A DNA stretch of 64,000 nt from Saccostrea echinata (Eukaryota): the NCBI RefSeq assembly GCF_033153115.1, contig NW_026889762.1, positions 4,898,001 through 4,962,000 on the forward strand. The letters run 5' to 3'. Below are positions 621 to 63,344 of this stretch, piece after piece (within the stretch, counting starts at the first letter, position 1; the number at the start of each line of letters is the position of its first letter). The notes under the pieces are model-generated. The model saw only the letters and a program-made list of their open reading frames with translations, was not told the DNA's origin and searched no databases. The position numbers were made by a program, and so were the translations under genes.

Positions 621-2959
621 AAGCCAGTGCAAGACAGTTAAGGTTTCAAATCTTTAAATAACTCAACAACATCGTTTATTTGATGCGTTCACAATTCATT
701 GCAGCAGGCTAGACTAAAAACTGCACTCAATAATAACACTTCTGAAATTTTAATCTTTTGTTGAAGGTCTATTCTATACAGATATTTTAAAAGTTATCTC
801 AAAATACTTCTTGCAAAGAAAGAAAATATATACACCACACGAATCAGGTGCTTTGGAGAATATGTACAAAACATAAACAGGTGCAATATTTGTTAGATGT
901 AAACAGATATTGAAAAGAGCAGACACTTGCCAAATCAGTTAGATCATTGAAATCTTGTTTATGTACTGAATGAAATATAATGCATACACCTTGTAAAATT
1001 GTAAAGGGCTGGTATCAATGAACAGCTAATTGTTTTGATGTGCAGTAATGACATTATAACAATATTGATTTTATACCTGATAGCATTGTTGGTTTAGGTT
1101 TTCAATGCCCTCCAGCAGTGACGCTTTGTCCCAAACGGAAGATTTATTATAGTTGTGGTTTTCCTTTTATAATAATTTCTTTCAGGGTGGTTTTTATCAA
1201 CCATTGGGGTTTTAAAAGAATTTACCGGCTCAAGTTAATTTTATATTTTTGTGCAGCTCATGTTTATCAGAAACTTACATATTATGTTCAAATGAATGTT
1301 TAAAAAATTCTGTCAAGTATTAAAATATAGATTATAATTTTTAAAAAATTAAAGTGTATTAGCCTCTCGGAATCATATGTTTCAATTCTCAGTATTTTCC
1401 ACATCATCACATGTCCAATTATGTAACTTTGGTCCCCAAATCAACGAAACGTAGTACAACACCTTTCTCAGGCTGTCAATTCAAAAAATGATATTACATG
1501 TAGAAAAAATGACATTGTTTGAAAGTGAAGCCCAGAACTTCAAATAATACCAGCCATAAAGATGATCTCCAAAGAAATGCCATCACAGAAAGATATCATA
1601 TACACATATTTCTTTATATAATGTTATCCATTTTTTGTAGCAACGCCAATCTCTCATTCTGTCATGCTTTGCACGTTCATTGGACCTACACCTTAAATAT
1701 GCACAATGTAGCGATGATTAACAACTTCAGCGTGTAAAATTTGTTTGTTCTGAATTAAATGTTTGATATTTTTACCTCAAAGATCCTTTGCGTTTTAGGG
1801 GTGATAAAATAAAGAAGAACATGGAAAAGAAATCATGTTAATGTTTACAATACATGTACATTTGCTTCAATTAAGCCAACATTATAATGCAAAAGCTCCC
1901 GACTGTAATCAATCTACTTAGCTTTCTATAATTTTTTATGACTAATAACTGCATCCCTTTTATTGCATTTAGACAGGACTGTTTTTAACTTTGACTGTAA
2001 TACATTGTATATTGTTTAAGCAAGATAAGTTGACCGGTTAACGATTTCGAGAATGATTTTTAGCAATATGTCTAAAATAAATATTTTTTTCTTGATCTAG
2101 CCAGCGAGGGGGGTGTTAGTAAGACACGTGGGCCCCCGAACCCAATTGCATAGAAACACAGATCCCCCCTAGACATGGATCCTTGCTAAAAAAAAAAAAA
2201 AAAAAGGTAAGGGGAGTCATTAATATATATGAAGGATAGCAACTTGTCTCCCCCCCCCCCCCCCGGCCCCTAAAAATGGTTTTTCGGGTTTATATTATAT
2301 GAGCTATTAGTTTATCAGGTAAACATATTCTTTAATAAAAGTATTCAAGTGAAAAAAAATCTCATGGTGGCATTTTCCTTCCCCTACATGCAAGATAAAT
2401 TATGTCAATATGCAAGAAAAGTATGTCAACATGCAAGATATAAATCATATTTTACAAAAAAAAAAATCTAGGACGAGCAAAACTCTGATCGTTTAAAAGC
2501 AGCCAAAAGAAAAAAGGCATTTAGTGAGTATTAAATGTTAATTTTTACATCTGTGCTTGTTGCGTTGCAGTTAAAACGCAGCAAAGTCATTGTACATTAA
2601 TATTGTTGCACTATTTAGCAAGTCACAAATATTTTGCACTGTAGCCATTCTAAAAGAAAAGTTACATGTAATTCTTAAGTATTTTTCCTCTTTTTTTCTG
2701 TGTGGTCTTTCAAATCAAACCATAAGGGTTATTAACAAAATTTCAACTTTTAAAATGTTGATTTAATCAGCTTAAATTGACAATTGTGTAGTTACTAAGC
2801 AACACTAAGAATGAATTGAATTCAAGGAATTTTTTTTCACATTTTAAAATTATAATAATTGCTATTATACATGAAAAGTCAGAATGAATTAAGAGCATCA
2901 GATGGATGTTGAAATCTCGCATTAAGCGATTGAGGGGATGTATGAAAACTATTTATTCT

Positions 2960-3720
2960 TCTGTCTTTAATAATTCAGATGTGAAAAAGGAATTACATAG
3001 ATTACACGATCAGTATGTACTGGTCCCAGCTGACAAAGCTGGTAACAACATAGTCTTTGTTTGTAAGGCTCATTATTAGTCCCCTACCGGTGAAACCGGA
3101 GGGGACTATAGGTTTCCTCTGAGTCTGTCCGTCCGTCTGTCCGTCCGTCTGTCTGTCTGTCTGTCTGTCCCTCTGTCTGTCTGTCCCTCTGTCTGTCTGT
3201 CAGTCTGTCCCACTTGGTTTTCCGCACTTTTTTCCTAAACGCTTGCAGATATTGAGCTGATTTTTGGTATGTGAGTGTATCTTGATGAGTTACAGATCAA
3301 GTTTGCATTTCGTTCCGCTTCATTGATTTTTGACGGAATTACGGCCTTTTCAATTTTTAGGGGTTTTCCGCAATTTTCTTCTAAACGCTTGTAGATATTG
3401 AGCTGATTTTTGGTGTGTGGCTTTACCTTGATTAGTTATAGATCAAGGTTGCATTTCGTCCCGCTTCATTAATTTTTGACGGAATTTTGGCATTTTCAAT
3501 TCTTACGGGAGCCAGATTACACTTGCCGGTAGGGGACTAGTATTGCTAATGCAATACTCTCAGAATGCTTGTTTGAATTGTATTTTAGAAGATTGGGATT
3601 TAATTCTACGGCTGGAAATCCAACTTACACCCATACCTCCCTTTCTAAGGAGGATATTCTTCAAAATCATATGTCCCTTTTAGATAATTTTAATATTCCC
3701 AACAATCAAAATGAATTTGA
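2960..3720 (+). mobile_element. Penelope-like retroelement ORF fragment, interrupted by a HINE
   Basis: 2960-3073 reads SVFNNSDVKKELHRLHDQYVLVPADKAGNNIVFVCKAH (PADK motif typical of the region just upstream of PLE RT); resumes after 3573 as ..LGFNSTAGNPTYTHTSLSKEDILQNH. Confidence 0.8.
3074..3573 (+). mobile_element. Non-autonomous Helentron-type element (HINE/DINE-1-like), family A copy 1
   Basis: 5' subTIR TAGTCCCCTACCGG with adjacent inverted repeat, (GTCY)n microsatellite, two ~150-bp central repeats, 3' subTIR CCGGTAGGGGACTA, terminal hairpin AGTATTGC-TAAT-GCAATACT; two more copies at 37906 and 38441. Confidence 0.9.
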
Positions 3721-3771
3721 ATCACAAAATTTAACATATTTAATTTTACTTAAAATGTTTTTATATAAATA

Positions 3772-3920
3772 TAAACAATAGAATGTTTTTCTCTGTTTGT
3801 TTGTATGAGAACTAACGTCGCAGCTATTGCAGAAAAAGCTACATGTAGTTATGTTTTTTCTGCAACAGCTGTGACATTATTTCCTGTACTAACAACAAAA
3901 GAAAGCATTTTATTGTTTAA
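3772..3920. repeat. ~150-bp imperfect palindrome
   Basis: TAAACAATAGAATG..GCAGCTATTGCAGAAAAA / TTTTTCTGCAACAGCTGT..CATTTTATTGTTTA, with CTACATGTAG in the central spacer. Confidence 0.8.
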
Positions 3921-4349
3921 AATATACTATGAAATATACATATAATCTGCAAACAACTGATTCACATTAGAGAGAATATGTATATGGGTTTATTCTTTGC
4001 ATACTGTTTAATAAATGGAAAACATAAAATGCATCAAGAACATAGTATTGCATATATAACAGGATGTAGTGAACAAAGAAATCTTACTCTCTTAATTATA
4101 ATATCCAACAGATGGCATATATTAATATACAAATTTTCTTGTGGATATTTTTTGTACACATTATTTTTTTTCAAATAGAAAACGTTTTAATTTCTTTCAA
4201 TATATTTTGGTGAATAAAGCGAAAAAAAAATTAACTCGGTTTTTGGTTGTGAATTTATTGCTGCATGGCTACAGAAATTTGAAAAACTGGAGAATATGAG
4301 ATGATCAGTGAATCGGAAAATTAAATTAGGCTAAACTTACAAACTTAGC

Positions 4350-8049: not shown

Positions 8050-8050
<1 letters not shown>

Positions 8051-8092
<42 letters not shown>
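8051..8092 (+). repeat. Poly-T tract
   Basis: 42 consecutive T. Confidence 0.95.
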
Positions 8093-8093
<1 letters not shown>

Positions 8094-8447: not shown

Positions 8448-9232
8448 TAGGGATGGCAATCGATTACAGAATTGCTAACCGGTTAACCGCAAGACGTTCC
8501 GACTGATTAACCGGTTAATCGTATCAAAATTCACGTTTTCTTGACAATTGCTTTTCAAGTATAGCTCTGTCCATATACACAAATAGACCCAAATAAGACG
8601 ATAGAAGTTAAAACATTCCATAAGTCTTGATTCTGGATCAGAAAAATACGGTACATATTTTTTATTTCAATTTCAGTCGACAATAAAAATTGAGAAAACC
8701 ATGAAAAAAAAAAAAACCCTAAAAAATCTTTGATAATTTTCCAGAGCAGATGTCATAAAAGTTCTTTCTGCATTTTTACTATGATAACCAAAACTACATG
8801 TGAACTCTATATAGCCCTTAATTTACAATGTTTGTTTAAAAATTACAAGTAAATTGGATGGAAAACTGAAAACGACAAACACACCAATTCACACTGCTCA
8901 ATGATTCAATTATTGTCATTAAAGAATTACAGGACAGTCGGGGTAACGACATAGTGTTTTCACAGTACTTAATTAACACTACGTAAACTGACCAATTACT
9001 CAACGGTCTCAATCTGGAGATTCATAATTACATGTATGTCCAAATTATATCCTTTAAATCCTAAATGATCATCCTTTGTGCAGAGATTTCTTTTATTAAA
9101 ATAAATTTTTTAAAAATGTGTTCAATTTAACAAATATTTTATTTTTTCCGATTAACCGATTACAGATTTTCTAATCGATTGCCATCGTTCCGACCGAGTA
9201 ATCGGTTAACCGGTTACAAATTGCCATCCCTA
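8448..9232. mobile_element. hAT-superfamily MITE
   Basis: TIR TAGGGATGGCAAT...ATTGCCATCCCTA, perfect 8-bp TSD TTAAAAAT (8440-8447, 9233-9240), subterminal CGGTTAACCG motifs. Confidence 0.93.
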
Positions 9233-9616: not shown

Positions 9617-10376
9617 AAGAAAACAAAGAGAAAGGATTTTAAAGCGATAGTTTTCATCAATGCACATAATATCACATAATCCATATATGGACTAGAGACC
9701 TCAACTCATTTAAACATTATATAATCAATACCATCAACTCGTAGTAGTACTTTCAGTACTTTGATTTTCCTTAAGCTTGCCACTCCTTCTAGGAAGTCAT
9801 ACCTGAGGACCGCCATTGCAGTGCTTTCATTTATATAAAAAATGCACTGCCTTGCATGTGATCTATATATTTTTACATTATTTTATTATTATTATTATTA
9901 TTTTTTTATTATTACTATTGATAAATGAGAATGGAATCATGACAAAAATACCAACAATATAAATGGTCTTTAAAGGTTAAACAAATATTAAACACTTCCT
10001 ACTTTTATTTTATTTTTAGACTCGGGTTTTTTCTGTTTATCAATAGTTTATAAATAGTTTTCATTCTACGTGCCACTGGATCGCGTCCTATCAAGTTACC
10101 ATTCATTAACATATACGTTATATAATGTACAATGTACATATATATGTGGTATATTATCTCATTTGAACCAATGTGAATCTGTGAGACTTTCATTGTGGTG
10201 TCTGACATTAATGGACACTTATCTTCATTCTTTTTAAAATTGGTAAGTTAATTGATTAAGTGTATTTCTTGTATAATAACTTTGGCAGGTACATGTATTA
10301 GAAAAGCAAAGTGTTTACTGCTTGCTTATATTATTTGGCTCCAGTCTTTGTCACCCCCCTTTTTCAGCTCTTCAAA

Positions 10377-13519: not shown

Positions 13520-14200
13520 TCTCGGTTTGACCTACGTTGGATCAACATTACATGCCCACCGTATAGTAGCCATATTTCACACCAACATTTACTTCTGGAT
13601 CAGCATTTGGTCAACATCACTTAATGCTTTCATGCCAGCATATCATGTGTCGGGTCGACGTTGAACCAACATTTATTATCCCCGGTGAGCAGTTCGATTG
13701 TTGGGCCAACACTGGACCAATATAAACACTCTTAAAAAGGGAACACTTATGCTACCACTGGGCTAACGTTGGGCTAATGTACTATTACTGTTACAAAATT
13801 AAATAATCGTCTTTGTTACTGGTATTACACACACTGGACCAACGTTGGCCCATTGCAATGCTCCCAATTAATATGCACATCATCCTTTAGTTCGCAGTAT
13901 GACTATTGAGGAAATAAACAAAATGAGCCAACATTGGGTCAGTACTGTGGCATACAGCTTTAAATAAACAACTTCGTTTAGAGATTATTACAAAGGTTGG
14001 ACCTACTTTAGAATCCCAACATTCCCAAAGAAGTATTGCAAATCGGAGTTGGTTAACGTTGAAACAACGTCTGGCCAACGTAAAAATCTAAACATGGTTG
14101 GATACTAGAGAGAAGATTGACATACATGTAGTTACAATATGTACATTGGTCCAACGTTGGTCCAACGCTGTTTACTCAACGCCAACCATCGGCCAACCTT
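13520..14200. mobile_element. Decayed MITE rich in CCAACGTTGG palindromic motifs
   Basis: More than ten CCAAC(G/A)TTGG-like motifs in both orientations; termini not resolved. Confidence 0.6.
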
Positions 14201-21096: not shown

Positions 21097-21327
21097 GTAA
21101 TATATAATTACATTTAAAACAACTTAATTATATGTACATCACACAAATGACAGTACATGTATTTATACCAGTCTTTTTAAAACATGGTACAAAAAGCTTT
21201 ATAAAGTATGTAAACCAATGAAAATAATCCATTTTATTTCTTTTATATTGGTTGAAATACATTTCAATGACGGGTAAGCATGGTTAAGTTTTATATGTAC
21301 AGCATGTTATCATAGCGATCTTTTCAG

Positions 21328-21743: not shown

Positions 21744-21848
21744 TTGGTTTCAAATTACCGATGAAGGCCGAGGACTTGGTTGACATTCTGGAAGAAGATA
21801 GTGAAAGTCCTGAGAATACATGTACTTCATTATCACAAAAACCAGAGG
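21744..21848 (+). CDS. IAP coding exon 5
   Basis: TTTTTTCCAG acceptor, GTAATC donor; GFKLPMKAEDLVDILEEDSESPENTCTSLSQKPE; 105 nt, phase 1-1. Confidence 0.8.
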
Positions 21849-22464: not shown

Positions 22465-25098
22465 AAGTCATAAGACATTACTAGTTTCAACATAGACATA
22501 AATAACTATGTTATTTATGTCCCTGGTTTCAGAAGAATTAGTCCAAGACAAAATTAGACCAACTGCACCATTACTTCCACACTCCAAAAGGGGACACAGA
22601 CCAATTCAAAAATCATATGCAAACAGCTTTTTTGATCTTGTGTGCCTCAGCAACAGAACAAAGCAAAAAGCAAATGCAGCATTTTGTTCATGCCTGCCTT
22701 AGCTACATTTATTTGTCCTGATACTGGTTTTCATTGCAAATTATACACAAAATGATATAAACAATTGTTCTCCAAGATTTGATTTTATTGTATGTGTAAG
22801 AGAAAAATAATTCCAGTGTTCAATTTTGCTTCATTTGTACTCTCAACTGCTCAAAGAAGAAACTGCATGAAAATTTTAGTCATTATGCACATGCAGGGAC
22901 ATGTACACAAGTCCCTGATACATCTTAGAGTCATACTTAACATCTGCGAAAATTTAAATACCAATGAAAAAAATTGAGCATTGTGATGACCTATATAATT
23001 TGCATATGATCTCAATTTTCTACTTTATAATTTCATGAAACTGTGTTGAATGTTATCATTATGGGAACATGCAGTTTTCATGGATTACATTATATTGCTA
23101 TATTTAAATGTTAAATAATGTGATTTGGGATATGTGGTATTTTACTGCTTAAATATGCTTTGTTTACACAGGTATCATACATATCATATGATCTTGGTTT
23201 GAAAATATACAGGGAAATTAGAAATAAATACCCAAAAATACTTATGCCTGAACCAGCATAATAACATGGAGCAATACACTGTATATGTATTGAATGTTTT
23301 AATATCAATAAAAAACATACAAATTTGAAACTTGAGTGTTTATACATTTACAAATTATTCAGAAGTTTTATCATATTATTAAAACAGAACAACCAATGAA
23401 GAATTCTGGATTTTGATCATTTGAAAAAGTTTCTTTACCCTAAAAACTAATGTATTTTACAGGAGAAATGCCTGAACAAAATATAAACACTACACTAACA
23501 TATTAAATACATTGTAAATTCACGTGACTAGAGGAAAGTTCTATATAAAGCTGACATGTAACATGTATCACAACATTTCCAGTCTAATTATACACAACTA
23601 CATTTCTATAATCCTCCACAAAAAGAGTAGAGTCAAGCCATCAAATTTGTGTCAGCTCAGTGTCACACAAAGCCCCCCCCCACCCCCCCCCCCCCTTCCA
23701 ACATTCATGTTTAAAGATTTGTAAGTCAAATGAAGTAAAGATATCGATGGGTGTAAATGAAACTAAATATAATGTCATCATATTGATTCTTTTGTTTTCA
23801 TGAATTAGTTCTACAAGTCATCAATATCAATTGACATAACAAAATCAGCTCATTAATACAAACACAACAAAAGTGAATAATTAACAACTTTCAAAATCTA
23901 AGGGCACTTTCTTTCTTGAAGATTGATTAAAATTTTAAACATGAAATATGTGAGTCATCAATTTCAACAGACATATTAAAAATTAGCTCAGCCAAAAAGT
24001 AAATGAGTAGAATTTACAGAAGTCTAAGGGCAATAACTCTCTTGAACATTGGCTAATAAATACATGTATGAAACTAAAGAAAAGATGAAACAGACTTTTT
24101 TTTCAAAAATGAGTTCATCCACATAGATTTTACTTCTTCATTCAAAAATTTTGCAAATATGTCATATAAAGTAATATACAGTTGTATATTTTTATAAGGG
24201 TGATGGCAGAAAGGTAAAAATTTTGAACAATTCACAGAAAGTTTACAATTTCTTATTTCTTTTAAATTTGATGTTTGTATCATTCATAAATAATTAAAAA
24301 TAGGTTCTAAAATATGAATATCAATCCATACATCCATTTTTTAATTTTTTTTTTTTTTTTTTTTGGTATCAACTGTCCTTAAATTTTACCTTAATAATTA
24401 ACTCATTAAAATCAAGAGACACACCAACAATTAGCCCATTATATACCAGCTCAACAGTCAAAAATTAGAAATTTTCAAAGGTCTAAGGGCAATAACTCTC
24501 TTGAAAACTGATCAATAAACATGCATTTATTGAAGTATTCAAAGGAAAAAAGTTTGAACAACTAACTGTGACAGATGGAAAGGGGTAACACTATATGCCT
24601 TGATCATTACATTGTACCTGGCAGGGCATGAATGTGGAAATGCATATCACTACTATATGCATATATTGTAATTATATATTCTCACTTGTAAAGGATATCA
24701 CACAGTGATATCTCTAAGATATATGTAAATAATCTAGATACAGACTTGATATAAAAATTGCAGTAAATTTAAAAAGAATATATACATGAAAAAAAAATAC
24801 AAATACAATTGTATGCATGTGAAATCATCTTTTTAGACTAAATAAAGCAGTCAATTGAAAGCAATTTTGTTTCTTGTGATAAATTGAACACTCTGTTTCT
24901 CACACTTGATAAATATCTAATTTCTCCATAATAAATAAATATCAAACCTTCCAAAGGAAGCTAGAAAATCAAATTATAAATTAAAGTTTCAAAACAACTA
25001 AGAACTAAAATTTAAGTCCATTAAAAAAATAAGTTATCAGGGTAAGAAACAATAAACATAAAAGTGTCCTGCAGTTCTGCATAAACTAGTTCTACATT

Positions 25099-25353: not shown

Positions 25354-25838
25354 CTAAAATCAATTAAAGAGAATACAAGTTTCCTTTGACTTTCACAGAT
25401 TCGACCCAAAAGGTTTTGAATACAAATATTCTCTGAATATGGAAATTTTGCAGGAGGAACTTTTTTCCGAAAAATATAGTAAACACCAATCAATTATTTT
25501 AAATGGACGTGAAAAAAAATCATCAAGTTTTTTTCTTAAGGGATGTGCTTCATGAATATCTACATGTAATTCTAAAGTATTTTAGTACACACTGCTTAAT
25601 ACAGTATTATCTGGTCATTAAAATCACCAAATATTGATGTTGTATACAAATTATATTCTAAAACTGTACTGAATGAAATAAGCTTTCTTTATATAAAAAG
25701 CTGCTCTGAAGTTAAGGGTTCAGAAGCACTTATATTTGATAAGGTTGAAGTGAACTCAAAATGAAGAAAGGTCAGGGAATGAAAAATAAATGCATTAAAT
25801 AATGTTCAGGAAAAAAGATCAGTTCCATAGACCCCTAC

Positions 25839-26203: not shown

Positions 26204-26688
26204 CTGTAATATCAAATCAAAATTATAATTGCTCTCAATGATAATGAAAATAAACATACTATTGCAAAATGGGAATACAAAAATAATGTCAAAACATATC
26301 CAACATGTACAGAGCAGAGCTATGATTTTCATACATATATACAATTACAAAGGTATTGTGAAATAACCATTTTTTATGGGGGTTATGTGTTATGAAGAGA
26401 TCCACAAATTCATGTTCTCCATGAAATTCAAATGTTAAATTTACAAAGCACTGTACGTCTACCAACCATGAAATTTAATCTCCTTGAATCAGTATTTTTT
26501 CCACAAACCAGTAGTGCATGATGTTAAATTTAAAATTTTATGTACAGTTTTTTTTTAACCAATAGCTATATCAATTTTATTCTCTTTATAAAATGTGTAT
26601 ATACATGTAGAGTGGAATATATTACTTGTACGAAGTGAATAATTCTTTTCATGCAATTTTTTCTGGTTCTGGCACCTTATATGCTTAC

Positions 26689-26809: not shown

Positions 26810-27490
26810 TCTGCCACTTCTCAGTTAAATGTACAACAACAGCTCAGCTGAAAAAAGACCAATTTCTTATTGCCTTTGATTCTACATGTAATATATACGA
26901 GTACATGTAGCAATATCTAAAACTTGACAAAAACAGAAAATGATTTCATATATCGAAGTATTGGTTTGTCACAGACTAGGAATATATACATGTATATTTG
27001 CTAAGTTATCATGGTTATTGTGTCTTAAAAATTCTCAGTAGGGAGGGGGAGGGGGAGGGTAACAACAACCATTCCTCAGCTGCCTTTGGAAAATATTGCT
27101 CTTATATGACATATTTTATTGGTTCCCAATAAAAATAAAAAAGAAAATACTGTACTTTTCTGCTGCAAGAAGACTGTAATATGTATGTCATGTATATAGG
27201 GGTAATGAATGTTATTAAAATTTGTATCTAAGTAATGTAATGATTGATAAAAAAAAATGATTAAAGGGGGGGGGGGGGTTGCATCGTAGAAGTACGGACC
27301 TGTACATTAGTACCTGTGATCTGCACATGAAGAACAGCTAAGTTAACTCAAATAGAAAAGTATCTTGCTTCTTTTCTTCTTTCTGTGGTTAAGCAGAGAA
27401 AATTCGGCAGTATAACAAATTTCGCCATTCAGTTTCAATCAAACCAGCTGTTAAATGAATGACACAGAAAAGTGTTATGGGAGTACCTAC

Positions 27491-29816: not shown

Positions 29817-30680
29817 TGTTAGCTAACCTGAGCTGAAAAGTGAGCTTTTCTGGTCAAAATTTGTCAATTTTCTGTCATCATTGTTGTCATAAACTTTTCA
29901 CATATTCATCAACCTCTCTAGAACCACCAGGCCAATTTCAATCAAACTTAGTATAGAGTATGTTTGAGTGCAGAGAATTCAATTTGACATAATAAAGAGC
30001 CACAGTCTTTTTCAAGGGGAGATAATCAAGAAATAGTTGAAATTGGTAGGAATGATTTAAAAATCTTCTCAAGAACAACTGCATTAGAAAAGACAACATT
30101 TAGGGAAATGCTTCTTTATACAGTGTCGATTCCAGTTTATTCATTTCATGGTCTCCAGGAATGGGGTGAGTCATGATTGGTAATACATGTATTATTATGA
30201 AAACATCCTCAGGTATACTGCAGCTTCAAGTTTGTTCCAGTTATACTCTCAGTAGTTCAGGTGGGGCCAAATAGGGGATCACAATTTTACATGGGAATAT
30301 TTACCAAAAAATCCTTTAAAATCTTATTTTCAATCAATAACTTTAAGGGTCATGAATGGTCATACATATGTATTTACAAATATATGCAACTATCCTCAGG
30401 AAGTGCAGATCAAGAGATATGAATAAGAATCCCCAAGGGTTGTAATGAAAATTTCACATAGCAATATGTAGGGGAAAAATCTTTAATTTTTTCCCACAAA
30501 AACTACTTTGGAATGCTGTTCATATTATATATAATATGCAAGCATCTTGAGGTAATGTAGGTTCAAATTTGTTAAAATCATGGCTCTAATATAGAAGAAG
30601 AAAAAATAAATGCAAAAATCTTCTTCTCAGTATCAGCAGGGCTGTCTCAGGTGAGAATTGTGGCCCATGGGCCTCTGGTC
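29817..30680 (+). mobile_element. HINE/Helitron-N family B, near full length
   Basis: 5' TTAGCTAACCTGAGCTGAAAAGTGAGC; 3' CTCAGGTGAG plus hairpin GGCCCATGGGCC; central repeats. Confidence 0.8.
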
Positions 30681-33837: not shown

Positions 33838-35799
33838 AATCTTCAGAATTTTTCTACATTGAACTTACCTTTGTGTGAAAAATATGCAACAGAGAAAGAT
33901 ATGTGATGTCTTCTTTTCTGTAATATTTCCAGATTTACATTAAATGCAAAATATTTTCTATGCAGAAAAAAAAACCTTTATGACTGAAACAAATATTACA
34001 GGTGCACAATTTTTTTTAACCTTTTGTAAACAATTGAAATAAATGAAAAGATGATTTTGACACATTTTTTAGGAATTAACATTCATAGTATTAATGGTTC
34101 TAGGCTAAATTTGATAATAAATTCACAAAAAGGGTTTTACTTCAAAAATAAAAAGAAGAACATAGATGAAATTTCTTTTTATAATAGTTGAATAAAAACA
34201 TAACTAGGAACTTTTTAGAATGTATCTCATGGGTATGCTAAATTATTTTCAGAATTGATGATTAAACACTAAAAATACATGAATACTTCTGATTGGCTGA
34301 ATTACAGAAATCAATGTTACATGTATTTATACCCACTGTTTGTTGTGAACTTTTCTCACAGGTTGAGGATACTTTTGTGAACAATATATTATTTATTTTC
34401 TTTGTTAGGAAAATTAAAAATGATTTTTAGTGTGGGTGTGCATTTACAGTGTAATAGTTTTATGATGACGTGCGATGACGAGTTTTATTATAATGTTGAT
34501 GTATTAAATGGGATTGGGTTCAGAATTCTTACGATATAAACATTATGATAGTGATTATATTAGAAGTATTACATTATCATTGAACTTAATATATATTCTG
34601 AGTGTCAGCATAACCTTGAATTGAGTTAAAAAATAAAATGTGTTTGCATATGTTATGCTTAATTATGTATACTGTCTAGTCAGTGTATTTTTAAGCATCA
34701 AACAAATTGTAAGAAAAATGTAACTTGACAACTCAAAAAATATGTGATACTGTGGTCAAAATCTGACCAAAATAGGAATAGAAGAAAACATTACTTTTGG
34801 GGTTTTCTGAGTAAACTACTAGGAAAGGGACATAACTTTTATCATAACAATTTTAGATACATATTCAATTCAATTTTATATCAAATTCATATTACATGTA
34901 CATGTATCTATGTGAATAAATGATCTGTTAATTGATATCAGAATTGTTCACATTTAGTTACACTTTCATGAAGGATGGACTTTTTAAGGTTTTTTTTTCC
35001 AACTATCTCATCAAGCAATGGATTTACAGAGTTATGTCCCTTTTCTATAGTAAATAAATGGTAAATAATCCATGCCAAAACTATGCTTCTCATCATTTTA
35101 TTTTGTTGGATTTTATATCTTGTATATTGTGTAAATATTACATTTCATTTTTCAGGAAATAGCTTCTTTTGCAATTAGTTTGAGGTTGGGCCTAATTTTT
35201 TGCTAGATTGACAAGGCAGTTATCATTGACAAGAAGAATGGTACTGAAAACCACATGCTTCTTTTTGTTTTATATTTATTCTTAAAAGACAGTTTACAAT
35301 GCCTTTAAAATCTTTTCTGGATAAAATATTTTTACAATGCCTTCTAAATTTCTTTCTCTTGCTACATGTACTTTGTAGCAACTTAGCATTAATGCAACTC
35401 TGATCTTTAAAAAAATTAAGTTAATTTTTTAAACTAGAACATGTATAGTTGGCATATTTCTTGTAAGATTTGTAGAATATTAAAATAAATTTGATGAATT
35501 TCTTACCATAGTCAAAAATTCTTTGTAGCTAGAAAGGAAATGAGCTGTAGACCACTTTATGCCTATAATCAAAGAGCTTTTTACAAGGAGTTCCATTAAC
35601 TATATCTAAATGCATCTTCTCAGGCCTCTCCAGCAAGCAAGGAAAAACAAATGTATTTGCATCATCAGATGTTAAAATCTGATGCTAGGTGAAGTCACTT
35701 TCTATTTTAAAGCATTGAATAGACAGGAGTTGGTTGTACCTTCTGAAATGTTTTTATGTAATATCTTTAGATTCATTGAAATTAAGCTCCAGATTCTAC

Positions 35800-36020: not shown

Positions 36021-37905
36021 GGACAAAAAAGCAAATAAAAAAAGTAAAATTTCCGTCATTCAAAAAATTAATATTAATTATAAACTGATCGATATCTTTA
36101 ACACAAGATCACGAGAGTGCTGGTATAACAATTTTGAACTTGTAGAAGGACAGTCAAAATGGGGGAAGTTTTTGTGCATGGTCTTCCAAGTTTAAATAAA
36201 TATAGGATATTGGTTTGGTTTTTCTGTGTTTTTTTTCTTCAAAAAAATTCAATCAAATGTAAAACAAAATAAGAAAACTGGATTTTAATTGTAATAGAAG
36301 AGTCCTTGTAGTTGCTGTCTTGCAACTTGCTATTGTCCATCTAGCCAGTAAATAGCTGTGGACTGTAATCTTCAAGCTTTGAAAAATAAAGAAAATTTGG
36401 ATTCATTTGGTTTTCTGTTTCTTTTTTTCTTCATATAATTTCATTCAAATGTGAAACAAAACAAGAAAGCTTTTTAAAGTAGTGAAAATCCTTTTTCTCT
36501 GTAGCAGCAGCTGATAATCTGCCAAAGAGACTCAAATTCTGTGGAATCATCAATATTGAAGTTTGTGGGGGATCAATGTTAGTGGATTTCATGGGTCACC
36601 CTTATCCACAAATTACATCACCACGAACAATTATTTTGTCAACATATTTATTCATTGAATCTTCTTTATATATATTTATACAAGATACCCACGAAATTAT
36701 GTCCCCCATGAACCAACAAATTGTTGCTTGCCAACGAACATTGAATACTGTTCGTTATCTCCACATATTTCATTTACAACACACATAGCCGTGTAAAACA
36801 GAGTTATATAAGACACGTAGATGTGTCAAACATATTCAATATCATATAAAAACTCACCTAGATGCCAAAAATCTTTAACATATAGTATATAAGCTCATAA
36901 TTAGCAGTCACTTTTAAACTTGAATTCGCACTGAAAATGTTTCTACTTTATCTCCTACTGGCATCTATTCTCATTACAATCACATTGAAAGCAACCTTTC
37001 TTTCATGAAAAACATTATTCCACTGTGAACCTCTGACAAAAGATCTTGAAAGATTTTCGAATTCAACATACTCTTTAACAAAATATTTATATGTTCCATC
37101 TGTTATTACTATACCTGACCAAAAGGGGAGATGACGTCCATTTAGGTACAACCAACATGTACACCCCTCTAGCTTTACATGCCGTCAAGTGAGCTATTAC
37201 TTCGGGAACAAATCTAACCGGAGGAACAGCCCAGTTATTGTCTAACTTCCAATCAAATGTAAAAGCATCAACTCCAGCAGACATACTGTCCGCAAATTTT
37301 AAATAAAACTTTTTTACCTTGAAATTGAAGGAATTTGCAAACAAATCGCAAGTAAAAGGACCCCACTTTTATTAAACAATTGAAAGATGTTAACATCAAC
37401 ACCCAGTCATCTGCATCGTACATTTTGTTGAAAAAATCCGCAATCACATTTTTATTTCTTGGTATCCAACAAATCCGCAATCACATTTTATTTCTTGGTA
37501 TCCAACAAACTTCTAAAGATATTCTGAACAACATACAAATCTTAAATATAGAAAATGCAAGAATACGTAATTCTTATTCCATGCTTCCAACCTCAATAAT
37601 TCTCGCAGCATTTTGATTGTCTGTATGTAGTTTAACATTTTTACCTACAAGTTCTACCTTAAAAGCTTCTATAGTTATTTCAATTGCTTTTAAGTCTCTC
37701 CAGGTGGAACAGGTTTGTGCTTCCTCTTCTGACCATCTCTTGTGTACAATTTCCCCCAGAATTTCCACACAGTATCCTGCTCCTGCATGGTCACTTGCAT
37801 CTGTATAAAGCAATTTATCTGGCAAAACATAATTATTGAAAATTTTCTTAAAAGGTAAATGTTTACAATTTGTTTTCCAAAAATTCAATTCTACACTTGC
37901 TTCTT

Positions 37906-55318: not shown

Positions 55319-55787
55319 AACAGGCACCCAATCTTAAAAAAAATGTTAACCAAGGCCCGTTTTACTACACAGGAGGAAATTCCAACCATTAAAAAATGCG
55401 GAGATCCAAGATGCGGAACGTGTACATATTTAGAAGAGGGAAATAGAATCCAACTTAAATAAATCAGGAATGGAAATTCGAACCAACTCACCAATGAACT
55501 GTAAATCCGAAAACGTTATCTACTGTGCAATCTGTCCGACGTGCAAAGAATTCTATGTTGGAAAAATGGGAAAACTAAATGCCCAGGTTCGTATACACAA
55601 ACAACAAATTAAAGTCCCTAGTGTGCGTAATACACCATGTTATGAACATTTTGCAAAATGTGGCAAAGGAATATTTAGGATTTTCCCTTTTTATAAACCT
55701 CCAAATGAAAACAAAAATCTGCGTTTGGCGAAAGAGGACTATTTTATTAAGCTCTTTAAACCAAATCTACATGTTAATCGCAAATGA
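55319..55787 (+). pseudogene. C-terminal Cys-rich linker plus GIY-YIG endonuclease of the Penelope-like element
   Basis: LKKMLTKARF..KKCGDPRCGTC; NCKSENVIYCAICPTCKEFYVG..H..EHF..E.YFI..FKPNL; frameshift from a TAAA duplication at 55456-55463. Confidence 0.88.
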
Positions 55788-56370: not shown

Positions 56371-57247
56371 CATATTTTTAACTGATATCCTATGCATGTA
56401 ACATATCATTTCAAAAGAAAACTTTGAATTCATGTCCAAAAAAGACTAGGCAGACAAGAATTCCAGTGTCTTTAATCTTTTGCACAATAGTCAAAGGTTA
56501 ACAAAGATAAATGCCCACTCTTCTCATTAAGTAAACAACCTTTTTTAAGGTTTGAATGTTGCAAAATATTGTCTTGACTTTTTCGTGAAATTGCTCCAAA
56601 AGAGAACAAGACTGTAATTCATGCACACACTGTGAAATTTTGTACTCAGTTTTTCACTGTGTAAATTACTTGCTTTGTTGAGCACCTATAATAAAAACCA
56701 ATTTGGAAAAACACTTCTAAAAAAGTGTATTTCAGGTCACAATTGCATTTGTCATAAATAAATCTAAAATGACATATATAAATACATGTATTATAACATA
56801 AAGATCATAAAACAGAACAACAAAGATACAGATAAAATGTATCTTTAATATCAAAGTTTAAGAAAGCATGCTACAAGACGGTACAACTGATGATAAAAAA
56901 GTCAAATGTAAATATTATCAAATTGGGATTAAGAAATAGAACAGCACTGAGACAGATAAAATCAAGATTGTGTCTTTTTAATATCAACGTTTTTAAAAGC
57001 AATTGGAAGAAGATGGTACAACTGATGATAAAAAAGTCATATGACTTGTTTTATCACCATTATTAAAGCACATTGCCACAGTTCCTTTCTCAGTTACCTT
57101 CAGAGATACAAAAGATTTAGCAGGTAAAAAAATTCTTTTTGTTTAACATACTCTTTTTTTTTTTACAGAGCATGTTATTTCAACATCTTTATAATCAAAT
57201 ATTCAATTACAATAATTAAATTTTACAGCATTTAAAGACTCTGAAAA

Positions 57248-58143: not shown

Positions 58144-61100
58144 TTCAAATACATGTAAACAATTTGTGCTTAAGATTTATTTTTTCCTGATTGCTAAATA
58201 AGTGATTTGATCAATACTATATTTACCGCAACGTTACGATTTACACCAATGAGACATATTTGCATTGTTATGATCAATAAAAAATGATGCTTTATTCCAA
58301 AATAATATTTCTATGCATTAATTTCTTACAATTAATAATAATAATAATGATAATACTTTATCTATTTTAAGAGGGTAACCCGATTAGTGCAAAGCACTAG
58401 TCTTCCTCGGGGCCCTCTATGCATGTATAGTACAAATATAAATACAACAGTACAATAATCAGAAAAATACAAGTATATGACATAGGTGAAATGCATTTGA
58501 GAAAAGTATATATCATTAAAACATAGAAACAAGTTACAAATTAAGAAATGTTGCGTCCATTGATGATAAATTTTTCTACATTTTTACGAAAGGATTGTGC
58601 AGTTGATGAAAAACGTACATGTAGTAGTAATATTTGTTCCAATTCATTATGAACAATTAAAATTTGTGATTTATCAAAATGCAGGATATAACATGCTGTT
58701 TTTAACCTCTACAGTCACTTTAATGACATAAATCAAGTTTATTCAGAAGTTTGCTTGCAGAAATTAATCGTGGAACAAGATCGATATAAAACTAAGGGTA
58801 TTGTTTGTTTGTTTGTTTTTTACCAAAGAACATGTTTTTCCTTCAAAGTTTGGTTTTCTTAGCATGAGCTATATTATTTAAGGTCAAGATCTAGTAAATG
58901 GAAGGTACCTACAGATTTCTCAAATTTGAGAAACGAGTTCTTTTAATGATCCTGTACAAATACAACTAGGTAAAATAAGGTGCATCGGGACATGAATTTA
59001 GGTAAACTCAACGAAAAAACATATTTTAAGCTGTCATTTTCAATGAAAAATGATGGAAGTCAGGAATAAATTTCAGAGATTTTTTCTTTCTCAGAAAAAG
59101 GAAATGTATCAATATTGCCCACAGTCCCTCATGAAACGGTTTTTCGTATCTTCCTGACCTCTACTTTAAAATGATATTAAATTAAATGTAGGTATCGGGG
59201 TTACTTTTGACATGATTTGAAATTGAATTCTATAAAAAGGCTTCATTATTATAGTTGTAAAGTACGGGAAAAAGTCAGTTTGAATTTATGATGACGTCAT
59301 AATGGATCTAGCATAAGAAAGACAGTCTTAATCATTTACTAAATCTTGACTTTAATGAGTGAGAAGGTGTGATGTTGGCAATAATAAGGGCTAATCCTCC
59401 ATATTGCATACTGCTCAAAAAACTACTACATAATTTTTGCAGAGTCAAAAGTTTTGATTCATATGGCAATTAAATCAGACCATTTCATACAGAGCATCCT
59501 TTCTTATCATCATCTTGTAAGATTGAATTCTAAATACAAGGATTTTTCCTGCTAAATTGTACTATACTTTCCGCATAATTAAAAAATAATGAATGCATTC
59601 TCTTGTAGTCCTTACTTTTTATTCAATAATGACTTTAAATTATACAGTATACAAATCTCAATCCAATATCTCATCATATATTAAAAAAGTTACGAAGAAA
59701 AAAGTTACGCACCTTTTGGTCACGCGGCGCAAGAAATACTTTCTTGGGCGATGTCCCAGAATTTCAGAATTTTTTTTTAAAGTTTTCCCCAGCATGCACA
59801 ATGCATTTTTGATGGCGATATGCCCATCCGTTAAACACATTATAAAACCAAACTGAATTTAAATTCCTGTAATATATGCCATCATAGCTACTTTAATACC
59901 ACGCCGATCCCGAAAAAAATTCGATGTCCTCTGCAAGTCAAAATCCACTGGACAGTGGTCTTATTGCAGCCGTTATTTTTCTTACGGTTTTGCGAAGATC
60001 AACGTCGATGACTTGTTGAAATAAGTTTTGTCTTTGTGTTGTGATCGCCCACGGGGTGCATAATTTCTAGCAGTCCCATTGGAAATATTTCATGCCAACA
60101 GTTTTATATTTTTCTGTGTTCTACATACTCTCAATATCGATAATGGCATTATTCCAGATTGAACAATTTTTTATGGCATTCATTTGCGATGTATCATCGT
60201 GAAATGTCAACTTTTTTTCATCTTTCTCAATAATAGGCTCTCCTATTATTTCATAAAAAGTGACGTCAGATATTTGACAATTTCAGATTTACCTAATAAT
60301 TCATTCTTTTCAAGTACATAAATATTTTTTCTGTAATTCAAAGAAATACCTGAATTTTGGTTCACTTTTGAAATCCATATCTTAAAAAAATATTACATTT
60401 TACGTCGTGTGCCACCTGGGCATACCGTGCATCATAGATATCTCATATTTTCTTTATTAGGGTTCTCATTGAACAAGTTATGGCCTCGACTTTTTAATTT
60501 AACCTTGATTTGATAAAAGAAAGAAGGTAATAAATTCAGTGCACTGCATCTCATTTAATACCTTGTTCACACAAATTCGCATTACATTTTTGATTTCAGT
60601 AAATTGATGTGAATTAAAATAATGCGAATTAAACTAATCCAAAATAATTATCGATCACACGACAGCTAATGCAAAGTAAATCATTGCGCAATAAAATTTT
60701 ATAACGTATCATGTCAATTGCAAAGAAGAAGGTACGTTATGTACCAAAATCGGCCCTGTCCCAAATCTGATGATTTTTCTTTTTTTTGTTTTTTGAAAAC
60801 ATGTCTAAGATGTCCTCTCCTAATTTAATTTATTTTTTTTTTATTATCGCAAACTTTTTTTCCTACAGAGCTTTCTAAATATGAATAGTTTCTTCAGAAA
60901 ATTACACTATGATGTTATGACGTCAAGCTGGCGTCGCTATGCAAAAACTTAAAAACCCTGAAGAGTAAAACAGGTATGGATATCCCATAGAAATCAAGAT
61001 TTGTTTTCCCCCTGCAACTATTATTACTTATTCCAAAGAAAAACTTAAAAAAACAAAAAAACCTTTTCCCTGTTTGATACATATATGATGTGCTAAGAGG

Positions 61101-61661
61101 ATTTCAGCATCCTCAAAGGTTTCAATTTAAGATACATGACTGATGTATTTTAAATTGACCTCAAGTTACTTATTATAAAAAAACTAGATGCTGTCATAAG
61201 ACAGTAATACCCGCACTAAGGTGTTTGCCTCTAAATGCACACCTCTTCAAACTGGGATAACTAAGGAAAAAACCAGAATAATTCTATAATTTATACAAAA
61301 CATGTATTTGTCAAATTGAGCATAAAATGCTCAGGTGACCATGTGACCCATGAGCCTCTCATACGCATTTCATATACATGTACTTCATTCATTACTAGTC
61401 TGAAATTACAGAATTCATTTAATGATGTAAATTATATAATTAGGTTTTGATAAAAAGGGGGGGGGGATAAATTTTTGGCCCAGAATTGGAACTTTTTACG
61501 TTTATTTTCTCAACATCAAATAACATTATTTTAGTGCAAAGCATTTTTGATGAACTTAGGTGCCAACTTTCAGTATTGAACAAATGGTGCAAACTTTTTC
61601 AGTACTTGGGTAGGCAAAAACCTGCTCAAAAAGCCACACACAATCAATTTTGTCACACACC

Positions 61662-61692
<31 letters not shown>

Positions 61693-62132
61693 AATTTGCC
61701 TGTTTTTTGGAAATAGGCATAGATAGCAATTAAAGTTATGTTAAAACATCGTTTGTAATGATAATTTAAAATTTGTCCTTGTACTGTACATGTGTACATT
61801 TTAAAATTTCTACATCACATTGGACTTGCGTCACCCTACTAGTACTAGTTTTACCATTATCTTTTGGATTGCACATGGTGTAGACATCGTTACATAGGCC
61901 TATGTCAGTAGGAATTAATTCATTGTGTGTTTTAATTGGATTATATTTCATGAAGTTGACAGTACCTATGACAGTCGGTAAGTACAAGTTTAGGTATAGA
62001 TTGTGGTAAAATAATCTGAAATGCAAATGGTTAGGTTAAAGTTAAAAAAGGATCAAAGATCACCGGATGCCATAACAGACGAATTTCACATTCTGAAGAG
62101 TTATCTCCCGTTGTCGACATTACATTCAGTTA

Positions 62133-62460
62133 CAGGCACAGATCCAGGAATTTTTTCCAGGGGGGGGGGGGGGGGGTTTCACACCTCAGTCAAAAAATTT
62201 CCAGCCCAGAATTTCCTGAGAAGCAAAACAAACAAACAAACAAACAAACAAACAAAAAACAAAAAGAAAAAAGAAAAGCAAACAAACAAAATAAAAACAA
62301 TGATGGTGGGGTCCATGTTTTTAAAGGGGGAGGGCGTCCAAAGTCATTTTTTATTTGCTTCTGTAAATCAGTATATAGTCCTTTTTAAATAACTCTGCAA
62401 ATTCCAGGGGGGTGGGAGTGGGGTGGGGTGGGGGGTCCAATCTCCCTAGCCGCTCCCTGT
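62133..62460. mobile_element. Decayed G-run-containing MITE (hAT-like CAGG..GATCCAG end)
   Basis: CAGGCACAGATCCAGGAATTTTTTCCAGGGGGG left end; right end degenerate. Confidence 0.4.
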
Positions 62461-63344
62461 CCTTGAAATGACAAATGATCATGTGACTCCAAAATAGTAG
62501 AAAACTTTTCCATTTGACTATACATAATTTTGTCTCTTGTGTTATTATGTTATGTACATCTAATGATTTAAGGTTATGAACCCCTGGAGGTCATCCCCAC
62601 TCTCTTAATGAACTGGAAATGTTCACAATATGACTACATCAAATTAAATAAAAGTGCATTAATGATAAGATTGCTTGACATTTCATTCATGAATTTGGGT
62701 CAACCCATGTACCCTCCTAGAATTAGGAATGAAAATCATTCAAAGAGATGGACTATTAAACTATTTGTATATATTCACATTTTTTCATGTCAAAACAGAG
62801 TATTAGTTTGCATACATGAACAAATAGGGGTCTGGGAAGGGGAAGGGGAAGGAGTTATTTGTTGAATTGTTGAAAACTCCTAAAATGAATGTTAACCTCA
62901 AATCTGACTTGTACGTCTTCATTATTTTTAAATGGTGGTGTCTCCACATGAGTGAAAAATTCCCAAGAGGGACATTTAACAACAAACAAACAAATGACTT
63001 GAAAAACACAATATACATGTACATGTTTATTAGTCAACAGATAATACTTCTGGTCATATCTCTAGGTCTCCCTTGAATCAGAAATGATGATATAAATATT
63101 TTAAGAATGATTAAGAATTGAAAAGGTTGTGCATCTTAAAATTGACTAAGCTCTGTGGTTGAATTAGCTATACCAGTTTAGCTTATTTTTCTACTCAAAG
63201 CACCTTGATTAACTAATTTTCTGAAATGTGCAGTTTTTTCAACATGGATACAAGTCATATATTTTCAGCTTCTGAAAACAATGCATGAAAAAAAAACTGC
63301 TTTTCAAATACTTTAACTCCTTCCAAGTACTTGTGATCATAAGT

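What the first reader, a model, noticed from the sequence alone, without database searches (positions are those of the whole stretch)
1495..63021. TACATGTA is about tenfold over-represented, and ACATGT appears as a clean 6-bp insertion in two unrelated dead ORFs
Seen: I counted 29 TACATGTA octamers by eye (e.g. 1495, 1851, 2663, 3840, 9029, 10290, 14123, 24061, 25561, 26883, 26902, tandem 34893/34899, 40920, 56783, 58150, 63014). About 2-3 are expected at roughly 68% AT. ACATGT also adds exactly two residues inside family motifs: DIRS MT domain ARGV[YM]LVVPKW (37155-37160) and Penelope GIY-YIG end FKPNL[HV]N (55769-55774), each time after a T. The TRIM-like pseudogene breaks off next to one (58150). 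Inference: a recurrent process leaving a fixed palindromic 6-mer, such as an excision footprint, a minimal mobile element or a templated repair signature, rather than a selected transcription-factor site.
Basis: partly seen in the sequence, partly recalled or inferred. Interest (0 to 1): 0.8.

Follow-up and report, generated by a model that had tools for sequence, protein, structure and literature searches.

The report
Fossil transposon excision scars (TACATGTA)
The eight-letter word TACATGTA is scattered about ten times too often through this mollusc-like genome, most likely as the small scar that cut-and-paste Tc1-type transposons leave when they jump out of a TA site, so it keeps a countable record of past transposon movement.

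Summary
TACATGTA occurs exactly 29 times in the window against 1.6 to 3.6 expected. It occurs 311,761 times in the 923-Mb genome and 34 times in an independent 100 kb. All flanks differ, so it is not a repeat family.

Where a site is private to one repeat copy, the other copies lack exactly six bases. Three of about ten independent 6-bp indels are of this kind.

The flanks carry the A-3/T+3 target signature of Tc1/Sleeping Beauty integration: 35% against 12.5% of ordinary TA sites, and 26% genome-wide. The genome holds at least 828 Tc1-like transposase matches. Three of five sampled intact families end TA|CAG...CTG|TA.

Best reading (0.72): a Tc1-type excision footprint, TA + CA + TG + TA, which then decays neutrally.

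Weak points:
- No same-locus filled, empty and scarred alleles could be seen.
- Two window sites tested were not clean private insertions.

This scan's first readers noted the same word in many other windows of this genome. The mechanism is known; the scale is unusual.

The parts
1495..1502 (.). TACATGTA octamer, unique flanks
1851..1858 (.). TACATGTA octamer, followed by CAT (partly doubled unit)
2663..2670 (.). TACATGTA octamer
3840..3847 (.). TACATGTA at the centre of a ~200-bp palindromic MITE. In 20 other copies the centre is mostly a longer palindromic stretch, so this is a complex replacement and not a clean +6 at TA.
9029..9036 (.). TACATGTA inherited within a repeat family. 19 of 20 other copies carry it and 1 has TACATATA. 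It is not an independent event in this window.
10290..10297 (.). TACATGTA octamer
14123..14130 (.). TACATGTA octamer
21154..21161 (.). TACATGTA octamer
21817..21824 (.). TACATGTA octamer
24061..24068 (.). TACATGTA octamer
25561..25568 (.). TACATGTA octamer
26602..26609 (.). TACATGTA octamer
26883..26890 (.). TACATGTA octamer, first of two that start 19 bp apart
26902..26909 (.). TACATGTA octamer
26987..26994 (.). TACATGTA octamer
30184..30191 (.). TACATGTA inside an old (~73% identity) repeat. The paralog alignment is too loose to give polarity.
31680..31687 (.). TACATGTA in an intron of the spliced + strand gene
32021..32028 (.). TACATGTA in an intron of the spliced + strand gene
32361..32368 (.). 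TACATGTA in an intron of the spliced + strand gene
34318..34325 (.). TACATGTA in the transcribed last exon; present without indel in transcript contigs of four runs of one sample
34893..34906 (.). Doubled scar TACATGTACATGTA (octamers at 34893 and 34899), inside the transcribed last exon
35363..35370 (.). TACATGTA in the transcribed last exon; no indel in transcript contigs
37155..37160 (-). ACATGT, a 6-bp in-frame insertion in a DIRS-like ORF. It reads TACATGTT on the - strand. It is absent from 2 of 3 other copies and the ancestral site is not TA.
40920..40927 (.). TACATGTA octamer
55768..55773 (+). TACATG (equally ACATGT at 55769-55774), a 6-bp insertion in a Penelope remnant. It is absent from 29 of 29 other copies. 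The ancestral site is C|TTAAT, so the insertion lies next to TT, not TA.
56783..56790 (.). TACATGTA octamer
58150..58157 (.). TACATGTA 240 bp downstream of the end of the B-box (TRIM-like) ORF
58616..58623 (.). TACATGTA octamer
61375..61382 (.). TACATGTA octamer
63014..63026 (.). TACATGTA followed by CATGT, a doubled unit that has decayed at its last letter

Best explanation
TACATGTA is the excision footprint of cut-and-paste Tc1-type (IS630/Tc1/mariner) transposons.

Proposed steps:
1. The element inserts at a TA and duplicates it, so it sits as TA|CA...TG|TA.
2. On excision the transposase cuts the 3' ends exactly at the element ends and the 5' ends two letters inside. Each flank then keeps a 2-nt 3' overhang (CA on either strand).
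3. End joining keeps and fills both overhangs.
4. The original TA becomes TA-CA-TG-TA, a clean +6.

Most Tc1-like families here begin with CA, so many families feed one and the same scar. Scars accumulate wherever they are harmless and then decay by ordinary point mutation. About 3 x 10^5 intact scars remain in the genome, roughly one per 3 kb.

Shown here:
- the excess of the octamer;
- the +6 polarity at private sites;
- the Tc1-type target signature in the flanks;
- resident intact Tc1-like elements with matching ends.

Inferred, not shown:
- the excision event itself;
- the 2-nt stagger;
- the joining route that keeps both overhangs.
For: Excess.
- Window: 29 against 1.6 to 3.6 expected.
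- Independent 100 kb: 34 against 2.6 to 5.9.
- Genome: 311,761 against 104,634 for the reversed word.
- All flanks are unique.

Polarity.
- L044:7532 is TACATGTA where its paralog has TA, a clean 6-bp gap.
- L009:2115 is the octamer inside a (TA)n run where 6 spanning paralogs have pure (TA)n.
- The Penelope site is absent from 29 of 29 copies. The DIRS site is absent from 2 of 3.
- In an all-against-all comparison of about 300 kb, 3 of about 10 independent 6-bp indels are ACATGT-type. For the strict TA+CATG+TA form there was 1 hit against 0 for the reversed form.

Neutral decay.
- Variants one transition away that (TA)n cannot produce are 2 to 4 times over expectation: TACATGCA 15 against 3-5, TACATGTG 13 against 3-4.5, TGCATGTA 9 against 3-4, CACATGTA 7 against 3-4.
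- Paralog pairs show TACATGTA opposite TACATATA or TATATGTA.

Target signature.
- A at -3 together with T at +3 occurs at 22 of 63 octamers (35%) against 12.5% of 13,853 other TA sites, binomial p = 4e-6.
- Genome-wide the share is 82,359 of 311,761, or 26.4%.
- Ten control words of the form TA..TA give 4 to 18%.
- ANNTANNT is the majority-rule consensus of SB100X insertion sites (PMC8934666, passage).

Source elements.
- There are at least 828 DDE_3 candidates; 150 were scored, many with open frames above 300 aa and no stops.
- All 5 sampled families have an intact 340-388 aa ORF with HTH_Tnp_Tc3_2 plus DDE_3.
- In 3 of the 5, both copies (97-99% alike) end TA|CAG...CTG|TA. All 12 of their flanks have A at -3 or T at +3.
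- One copy (L058) sits on the TA of a TACATGTA.

Shorter scars.
- Among 4-bp indels, 2 independent events are TA to TACATA or TATGTA, against 0 for the reversed grammar.
- This is the +4 scar reported for C. elegans Tc1 (PMC12632400, passage).

Not an assembly artefact. Four sites are present without indel in transcript contigs.
Against: - No locus could be seen in filled, empty and scarred states, so excision is inferred.
- Two exact window sites that could be tested were not clean private insertions. 9029 is inherited within a repeat family (19 of 20 copies). 3840 is a complex replacement at a MITE centre.
- Only one exact TACATGTA (L044:7532) is a textbook TA to +6 case. L009 could in principle be two substitutions.
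The simple duplication model predicts TT-CATG-TT.
- The +4 words TACATA and TATGTA are not enriched overall (237 against 303 reversed). Nor are the +5 forms that a 3-nt stagger on CAG ends would give (56 against 46). The scar is therefore oddly uniform for joining of non-complementary overhangs.
- The test for the third letter of the element end was indecisive: TACASTGTA 30,924 against 16,538, and TACAWTGTA 49,726 against 33,708.
- In about 300 kb no abundant MITE with TA|CA ends was found.
- No new private scars appeared in about 11 kb of two further repeat families or in the other Penelope copies. The process may therefore be mostly old.
- In the 9029 family the octamer changed in 1 of 20 copies. 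By my rough eye count's slices, the flanks changed at about 5% per site.
- The five Tc1 families were picked by ORF length from the hit list, not at random.
Confidence: 0.72

Rival explanations
1. It is a transposon excision scar, but of a different source or chemistry. One option is a TA-targeting family whose ends begin CATG and whose 4-nt palindromic overhangs re-ligate perfectly. Another is an element that carries the inner A and T itself, with ends ACA...TGT and no duplication, and inserts between T and A.
For: - The scar is strikingly uniform: neither +4 nor +5 words are enriched.
- Both non-TA insertions fit 'X + ACATGT + Y' and not 'XY + CATG + XY'.
- TSD-less integrations with TA kept on one side only are reported for Sleeping Beauty (PMC5801840, passage). 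Its supplementary figure could not be seen.
Against: - None of the 5 sampled Tc1-like families has CATG ends; 3 have CAG.
- No repeated word beginning TACATG turned up, other than the octamer itself and one 14-mer confined to a single locus.
- Two +4 events of the CA/TG kind exist.
- Only 10 element copies out of at least 828 candidates were examined.
Confidence: 0.12
2. It comes from a mutational process that does not involve transposons. Options are decay of (TA)n microsatellites by two transitions, slippage of a TACATG unit, or templated insertion during break repair.
For: - TATATGTA (17) and TACATATA (22) are also raised and lie between (TA)4 and the octamer.
- The L009 site lies inside (TA)n.
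- Doubled units are about six times commoner than my rough estimate for uniform re-hitting: 6,645 against about 1,100.
Against: - Other double-transition products of (TA)4 are not raised. In the TA....TA table only TACATGTA stands out, at 29 against 8 or fewer for the other non-repetitive words.
- Most sites have no (TA)n flanks.
- Private sites are clean +6 insertions into sequence that holds no part of the motif.
- The inserted letters are the same whatever the flanks, so they are not templated locally.
- Nothing in this model predicts the A-3/T+3 signature.
Confidence: 0.06
3. It is a selected cis-regulatory word, for example a palindromic homeodomain or bZIP-type binding site kept by selection. 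The Iroquois-class site is recalled from memory and was not tested.
For: - The word is palindromic and sharply defined.
- In one repeat family 19 of 20 copies keep it while flanks vary.
- Four copies sit in a transcribed 3' exon.
Against: - There is one copy per 3 kb with near-Poisson spread: 0 to 8 per 10 kb.
- Sites arise as 6-bp insertions, including in dead transposon ORFs.
- Transition-decay variants are enriched, and paralog pairs show decay.
- A binding site would not carry a transposase target signature three bases outside itself.
Confidence: 0.05
4. It is an assembly or sequencing artefact that inserts the hexamer.
For: None was found.
Against: - Four sites are reproduced in independent transcript contigs.
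- The DIRS insertion is shared by two copies on different contigs.
- Sites decay like ordinary sequence.
Confidence: 0.01

Closest known systems
Tc1 excision footprints in Caenorhabditis elegans
   Same: The element inserts at TA and has CA...TG ends. The scar is the duplicated TA plus retained end letters. The reported typical somatic scar is TATGTA or TACATA, +4 (PMC12632400 and PMC13148408, passages). Two such +4 events were seen here.
   Different: Here the dominant scar keeps both 2-nt ends (+6, in frame). The +4 words are not enriched overall. Here it is a germline, genome-wide fossil record rather than reporter events.
Sleeping Beauty and ZB (vertebrate Tc1-like) footprints and target preference
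   Same: The target is TA within ANNTANNT (PMC8934666, passage) or a palindromic AT repeat (PMC7913693, passage). The octamer's flanks and the resident elements' flanks show the same A-3/T+3 pattern.
   Different: ZB leaves 0 to 3 bp, 'similar to SB and Frog Prince' (PMC7913693, passage). The 7-mers expected from a 3-nt stagger on CAG ends are not enriched here.
Non-TA and aberrant (TSD-less) Sleeping Beauty integrations
   Same: About 0.5 to 1.4% of integrations are at non-TA sites. Some insertions keep TA on one side only and have no duplication (PMC5801840, passages). The two ORF insertions here read TA-CATG-TT at an ancestral TT.
   Different: Those are integration junctions in mouse cells, not scars. 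The link is an analogy. The paper's supplementary figure could not be opened.
Stowaway/Mariner footprints in grasses
   Same: [quoted passage not shown]
   Different: The end letters are different and footprints are catalogued locus by locus. I saw no report of one scar dominating a genome's k-mer spectrum.

Membership tests
Tc1/mariner excision footprint | Form: duplicated TA around 2-4 letters taken from the element ends | tested here: met
   TA-CA-TG-TA. Resident Tc1-like copies end TA|CAG...CTG|TA in 3 of 5 sampled families.
Tc1/mariner excision footprint | The derived state is an insertion at an ancestral TA | tested here: inconclusive
   Clean in 1 case (L044:7532) and probable in 1 (L009:2115). 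Two ACATGT insertions lie at TT/AA, not TA. One window site is inherited in a family and one is complex. Four further sites are shared by paralogs and give no polarity.
Tc1/mariner excision footprint | Flanks show the transposase's target-site preference (ANNTANNT for Sleeping Beauty) | tested here: met
   22 of 63 against a 12.5% baseline, p = 4e-6. 26.4% genome-wide. Controls give 4-18%. The consensus is from PMC8934666.
Tc1/mariner excision footprint | Potentially active source elements are present in the same genome | tested here: met
   At least 828 DDE_3 candidates. Five of 5 sampled families have an intact ORF with HTH_Tnp_Tc3_2 plus DDE_3. Copies are 97-99% alike.
Tc1/mariner excision footprint | The same locus is seen filled, empty and scarred (alleles or orthologs) | not testable with these tools
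No related genome was on hand.
Tc1/mariner excision footprint | The 5' cleavage lies 2 nt inside the element | not testable with these tools
   This needs a biochemical or in vivo excision assay.
Selected transcription-factor site | Conservation above flanks, and origin by point substitution | tested here: not met
   Private sites are +6 insertions. Transition variants are enriched. Decay is seen between paralogs. One family keeps the word in 19 of 20 copies, which points the other way.
Dispersed repeat family carrying the word | Shared flanks between occurrences | tested here: not met
   All 29 flank pairs are unique. One of the 29 (site 9029) does lie in such a family of at least 1,029 candidates.

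The most novel reading that the evidence does not exclude
The octamer field is a quantitative fossil archive of germline cut-and-paste activity. It holds about 3 x 10^5 intact scars, and probably several times more once decayed ones are counted.

The scars would be made by many CA-ended Tc1-like families and sealed by a lineage-typical end-joining route that keeps both non-complementary 2-nt overhangs. That gives an in-frame +6, unlike the +4 of nematodes and the shorter scars of vertebrate systems.

Each scar recreates half of the preferred target, with A at -3 of its second TA and T at +3 of its first. Scars would then seed further insertions and doubled scars.

The TA-CATG-TT insertions at non-TA sites would record TSD-less integrations that carried one donor TA along.
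Probability: 0.35. Interest if true: 0.7.

Novelty: new variant of a known kind. Interest (0 to 1): 0.58.

Why it matters
Excision of DNA transposons normally leaves almost no trace, so genome history counts only the copies that stayed. If one uniform scar marks each departure, several things follow.

- Excisions can be counted, dated from the scar's decay, and mapped across a whole genome.
- Excision counts can be compared with the number of resident copies.
- The scar reports which end-joining outcome the germline of this animal group favours.
- Because the scar is +6 it keeps reading frames. It can add two residues to proteins, as it did in the two dead transposon ORFs here.

For annotators it explains the commonest complex 8-mer in this genome, so it should not be mistaken for a regulatory motif.

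Tried and rejected
1. Searching for TA-flanked inverted-repeat elements with CA ends. The window gave 60 candidate pairs, only one of them CA, and that one lay inside the Penelope hairpin. All sequence then held (about 300 kb) gave 65 pairs with one CA, again Penelope. No abundant MITE source was found.

2. Reads. The only runs found (4 runs, one sample, labelled 'DNA?') proved to be spliced transcript contigs. They show no polymorphism at the 4 exon sites and say nothing about the rest.

3. Third-letter test of the element end: indecisive. Both the S and W classes exceed their reversed controls.

4. Looking for other scars of the form TA-NN-N'N'-TA. None stands out. TTCATGAA is 17 against 5 reversed, but only about 1.5 times my scaling of the window's Markov expectation; I dropped it.

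5. More polarity tests from two further repeat families and one tandem array. These gave inherited or complex sites and no new private scars.

6. Inverted-repeat detection on three more Tc1 loci, L049, L050 and L052: no clear ends. L048/L051 end differently (TTATC...). L053/54 end CTGAGC or TACTGAGC, and L061/62 end CACTGG.

7. Literature.
- 425 held papers contain the octamer; 30 were listed.
- 4 papers hold it together with 'footprint' and 'transpos'. By title and abstract none concerns this; I did not open them.
- I found no report of a genome-wide TACATGTA excess read as transposon scars. Subscription papers and supplements are not covered.

8. Avoidance of young repeats. Only 1 of 29 sites lies in the 13.9 kb (22%) of the window that has paralogs in my sample. 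This is weak, because later whole-genome searches put sites 3840 and 9029 in repeat families too.

Full report
**What is there.**
The window is G000:C13:4898001-4962000 of a 923-Mb, 425-contig, 33% G+C animal genome. A BIR-domain ORF has its nearest atlas clusters mostly in Mollusca.

- TACATGTA occurs exactly 29 times.
- Expectation is 2.45 from composition, 1.62 at Markov order 1 and 3.62 at order 3.
- Dinucleotide-preserving shuffles give 1.61 ± 1.31, and 0 of 100 reach 29.
- It is the commonest 8-mer that is not low-complexity. Its one-letter neighbours sit near expectation.
- All 29 flank pairs differ, so this is not a dispersed repeat.

The excess holds across the genome. There are 311,761 copies (0.34 per kb) against 104,634 for the reversed word. 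Ten 10-kb pieces from other contigs hold 34, from 0 to 8 each, against 2.6 to 5.9 expected.

**Assembly gaps.**
The two N runs (44933-45073 and 56053-56188) touch none of the sites, and N-containing words were excluded from counts. I could not test continuity across them, and nothing below depends on it.

Both are real.
- Penelope remnant: 29 of 29 other copies read ...AAAGC|TTAATCG..., where the window reads ...AAATC TACATG TTAATCG....
- DIRS-like ORF: a 91% copy and a 66% copy lack the six bases, and a 94% copy shares them.

Both insertions are in frame. Both are atypical: on the coding strand each reads TACATGTT, and the ancestral dinucleotide is TT, not TA.

**How the word arises.**
I compared all sequence held (about 300 kb) all-against-all and merged family-shared events. 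About ten independent 6-bp indels remained, and three of them are ACATGT-type.
- One is textbook: L044:7532, TTTGT TACATG TATATG against TTTGT------TATATG.
- A further site, L009:2115, is the octamer inside a (TA)n run where six spanning paralogs have pure (TA)n.

When a site is shared by paralogs it is simply inherited. It is often decayed by one transition in one copy: TACATATA or TATATGTA opposite TACATGTA.

I found no case where a private octamer faces a multiply substituted 8-mer.

Two exact window sites that I could test were not clean.
- Site 9029 belongs to a repeat family that carries the word in 19 of 20 other copies.
- Site 3840 is a complex replacement at the centre of a palindromic MITE.

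Some of the genome-wide count is therefore inherited rather than independent.

**Decay.**
Variants one transition away that (TA)n cannot produce are 2 to 4 times over expectation: TACATGCA 15, TACATGTG 13, TGCATGTA 9 and CACATGTA 7. Most transversion variants are not raised.

The flank table for xACATGTy is dominated by T_A (63). Next come T_G 13, A_A 10, T_T 9 and C_A 7.

This is what a word made in one step and then left to mutate should look like.

**Whose scar.**
The form TA + CA + TG + TA is what a TA-duplicating element with CA...TG ends leaves if both flanks keep two end letters. Three independent lines tie it to Tc1-type elements.

- *Flanks.* A at -3 together with T at +3 of the TA pair occurs at 22 of 63 octamers (35%), against 12.5% of 13,853 other TA sites (p = 4e-6). 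Position -3 is A in 58% against 35% when the two sides are pooled. Genome-wide, 82,359 of 311,761 octamers (26.4%) fit ANN-octamer-NNT. Ten control TA..TA words give 4 to 18%. ANNTANNT is the published majority consensus of SB100X insertion sites (PMC8934666, passage).
- *Resident elements.* The genome has at least 828 DDE_3 candidates, of which 150 were scored. I picked five families by shared ORF length and fetched two copies of each. All five have an intact 340-388 aa ORF with HTH_Tnp_Tc3_2 plus DDE_3. In three of them both copies (97-99% alike) end TA|CAG...CTG|TA. All 12 of their flanks show A at -3 or T at +3. One copy sits directly on the TA of a TACATGTA.
- *Shorter scars.* Among 4-bp indels there are two independent TA to TACATA or TATGTA events and none for the reversed grammar. 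TACATA/TATGTA sites have a slightly raised flank signature (17%, p = 0.03). The +4 form is the one reported for C. elegans Tc1 (PMC12632400, passage).

**What does not fit neatly.**
- The scar is very uniform. The +4 words are not enriched overall (237 against 303 reversed). Neither are the 7-mers that a 3-nt stagger on CAG ends would give (56 against 46).
- The attempt to read the element's third letter from 9-mers was indecisive.
- No abundant MITE with TA|CA ends turned up in about 300 kb.
- The two TT-site insertions read TA-CATG-TT, whereas simple duplication predicts TT-CATG-TT. They behave as if TACATG were dropped in with a single TA. Sleeping Beauty shows non-TA integrations and TSD-less ones that keep TA on one side only (PMC5801840, passages). 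This is a possible parallel, not a demonstration, and the paper's supplement could not be opened.
- Young repeats carry few scars. Only 1 of 29 sites lies in the 22% of the window that has paralogs in my sample. No private scar appeared among the other Penelope copies or in about 11 kb of two further families. Much of the activity may therefore be old, although the L009 event lies in a copy 95-98% like its relatives.

**Doubled scars.**
TACATGTACATGTA occurs 6,645 times, against 1,288 for the reversed word. My rough expectation for uniform re-hitting of TA sites is about 1,100. That figure comes from about 79 million TA sites, scaled.

A scar supplies A at -3 of its second TA and T at +3 of its first. 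Re-use is therefore expected, but slippage of the 6-bp unit could add to it.

**Not an artefact.**
The four sites in the last exon of a spliced + strand gene are present without indel in transcript contigs from four runs of one sample. The exons are 30769-30964, 31427-31638, 32473-32568 and 33760-35453.

**Verdict.**
Most likely (0.72) these are Tc1-type excision footprints that keep both 2-nt ends. The mechanism is known. The +6 outcome and the scale (about one per 3 kb, the top complex 8-mer) are unusual.

I found no report of it in the papers searched. At least 38 first-reader notes from other windows of this genome make the same suggestion. They are unchecked notes and do not count as evidence.

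The decisive missing piece is a same-locus comparison (alleles or a sister species) or an excision assay.

Noticed in passing
window 6266-9743: A 3.5-kb element flanked by TA, with a perfect 14-nt terminal inverted repeat beginning CGAG. Two internal segments (8860-9200 and 9290-9625) have 99-100% identical copies on C9, C1 (three) and C56 (two). It looks like a very recently mobile DNA transposon or a recent segmental copy.
   Followed up: partly
window 30769-35453: A spliced + strand gene with GT..AG introns, seen in contigs of runs labelled 'DNA?' that are evidently transcript assemblies. In all four runs the contigs break and overlap at about 34870-34900, right at the doubled scar. This might reflect a variant there.
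   Followed up: no
window 9297-9619: A ~320-bp repeat with at least 6,631 candidate copies in the genome. The 40 scored copies are 92-100% identical. It is a high-copy young family (SINE or MITE).
   Followed up: partly
window 3724-3922: A ~200-bp palindromic (hairpin) MITE family with at least 1,305 candidates at about 80% identity. The window copy has lost the usual central stretch.
   Followed up: partly
window 3077-3539, 37909-38888: TA-flanked elements whose inverted repeats begin GTCCCCTACCGGTG. This is another TA-targeting MITE family, and its predicted scar TAGTACTA is not enriched (1 against about 2).
   Followed up: partly
L058 (G000:C37:3995225-3998653), left end near 1228: A Tc1-like element (CAGACG... 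end) is inserted at the second TA of a TACATGTA, so an older scar was re-used as a target.
   Followed up: partly
L003:3220 versus L002: One DIRS-flank copy reads TACATG-ACAA-TACATG-TA where the other reads CACATG-TA. This is a 10-bp difference that looks like a second, messier event on an existing scar.
   Followed up: no
window and L038-L047 (164 kb): The CpG-containing palindrome TGACGTCA occurs 12 times against 1.6 expected. One search also lists two TA-flanked inverted-repeat pairs whose ends contain GACGTC (TGACGTCACA and TTATGACGTC).
   Followed up: no
window 17382-19760 and 57248-57910: An intact 792-aa single-exon ORF with one BIR domain, and a 220-aa ORF with B-box zinc fingers plus a coiled coil (TRIM-like). 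The octamer at 58150 lies 240 bp past the end of the latter.
   Followed up: partly
G000:C1:12901-18100 (L103): A tandem array at the start of contig 1, with ~2.6-kb units about 92% alike, carries inherited octamers. One unit has decayed to TACATATA.
   Followed up: partly
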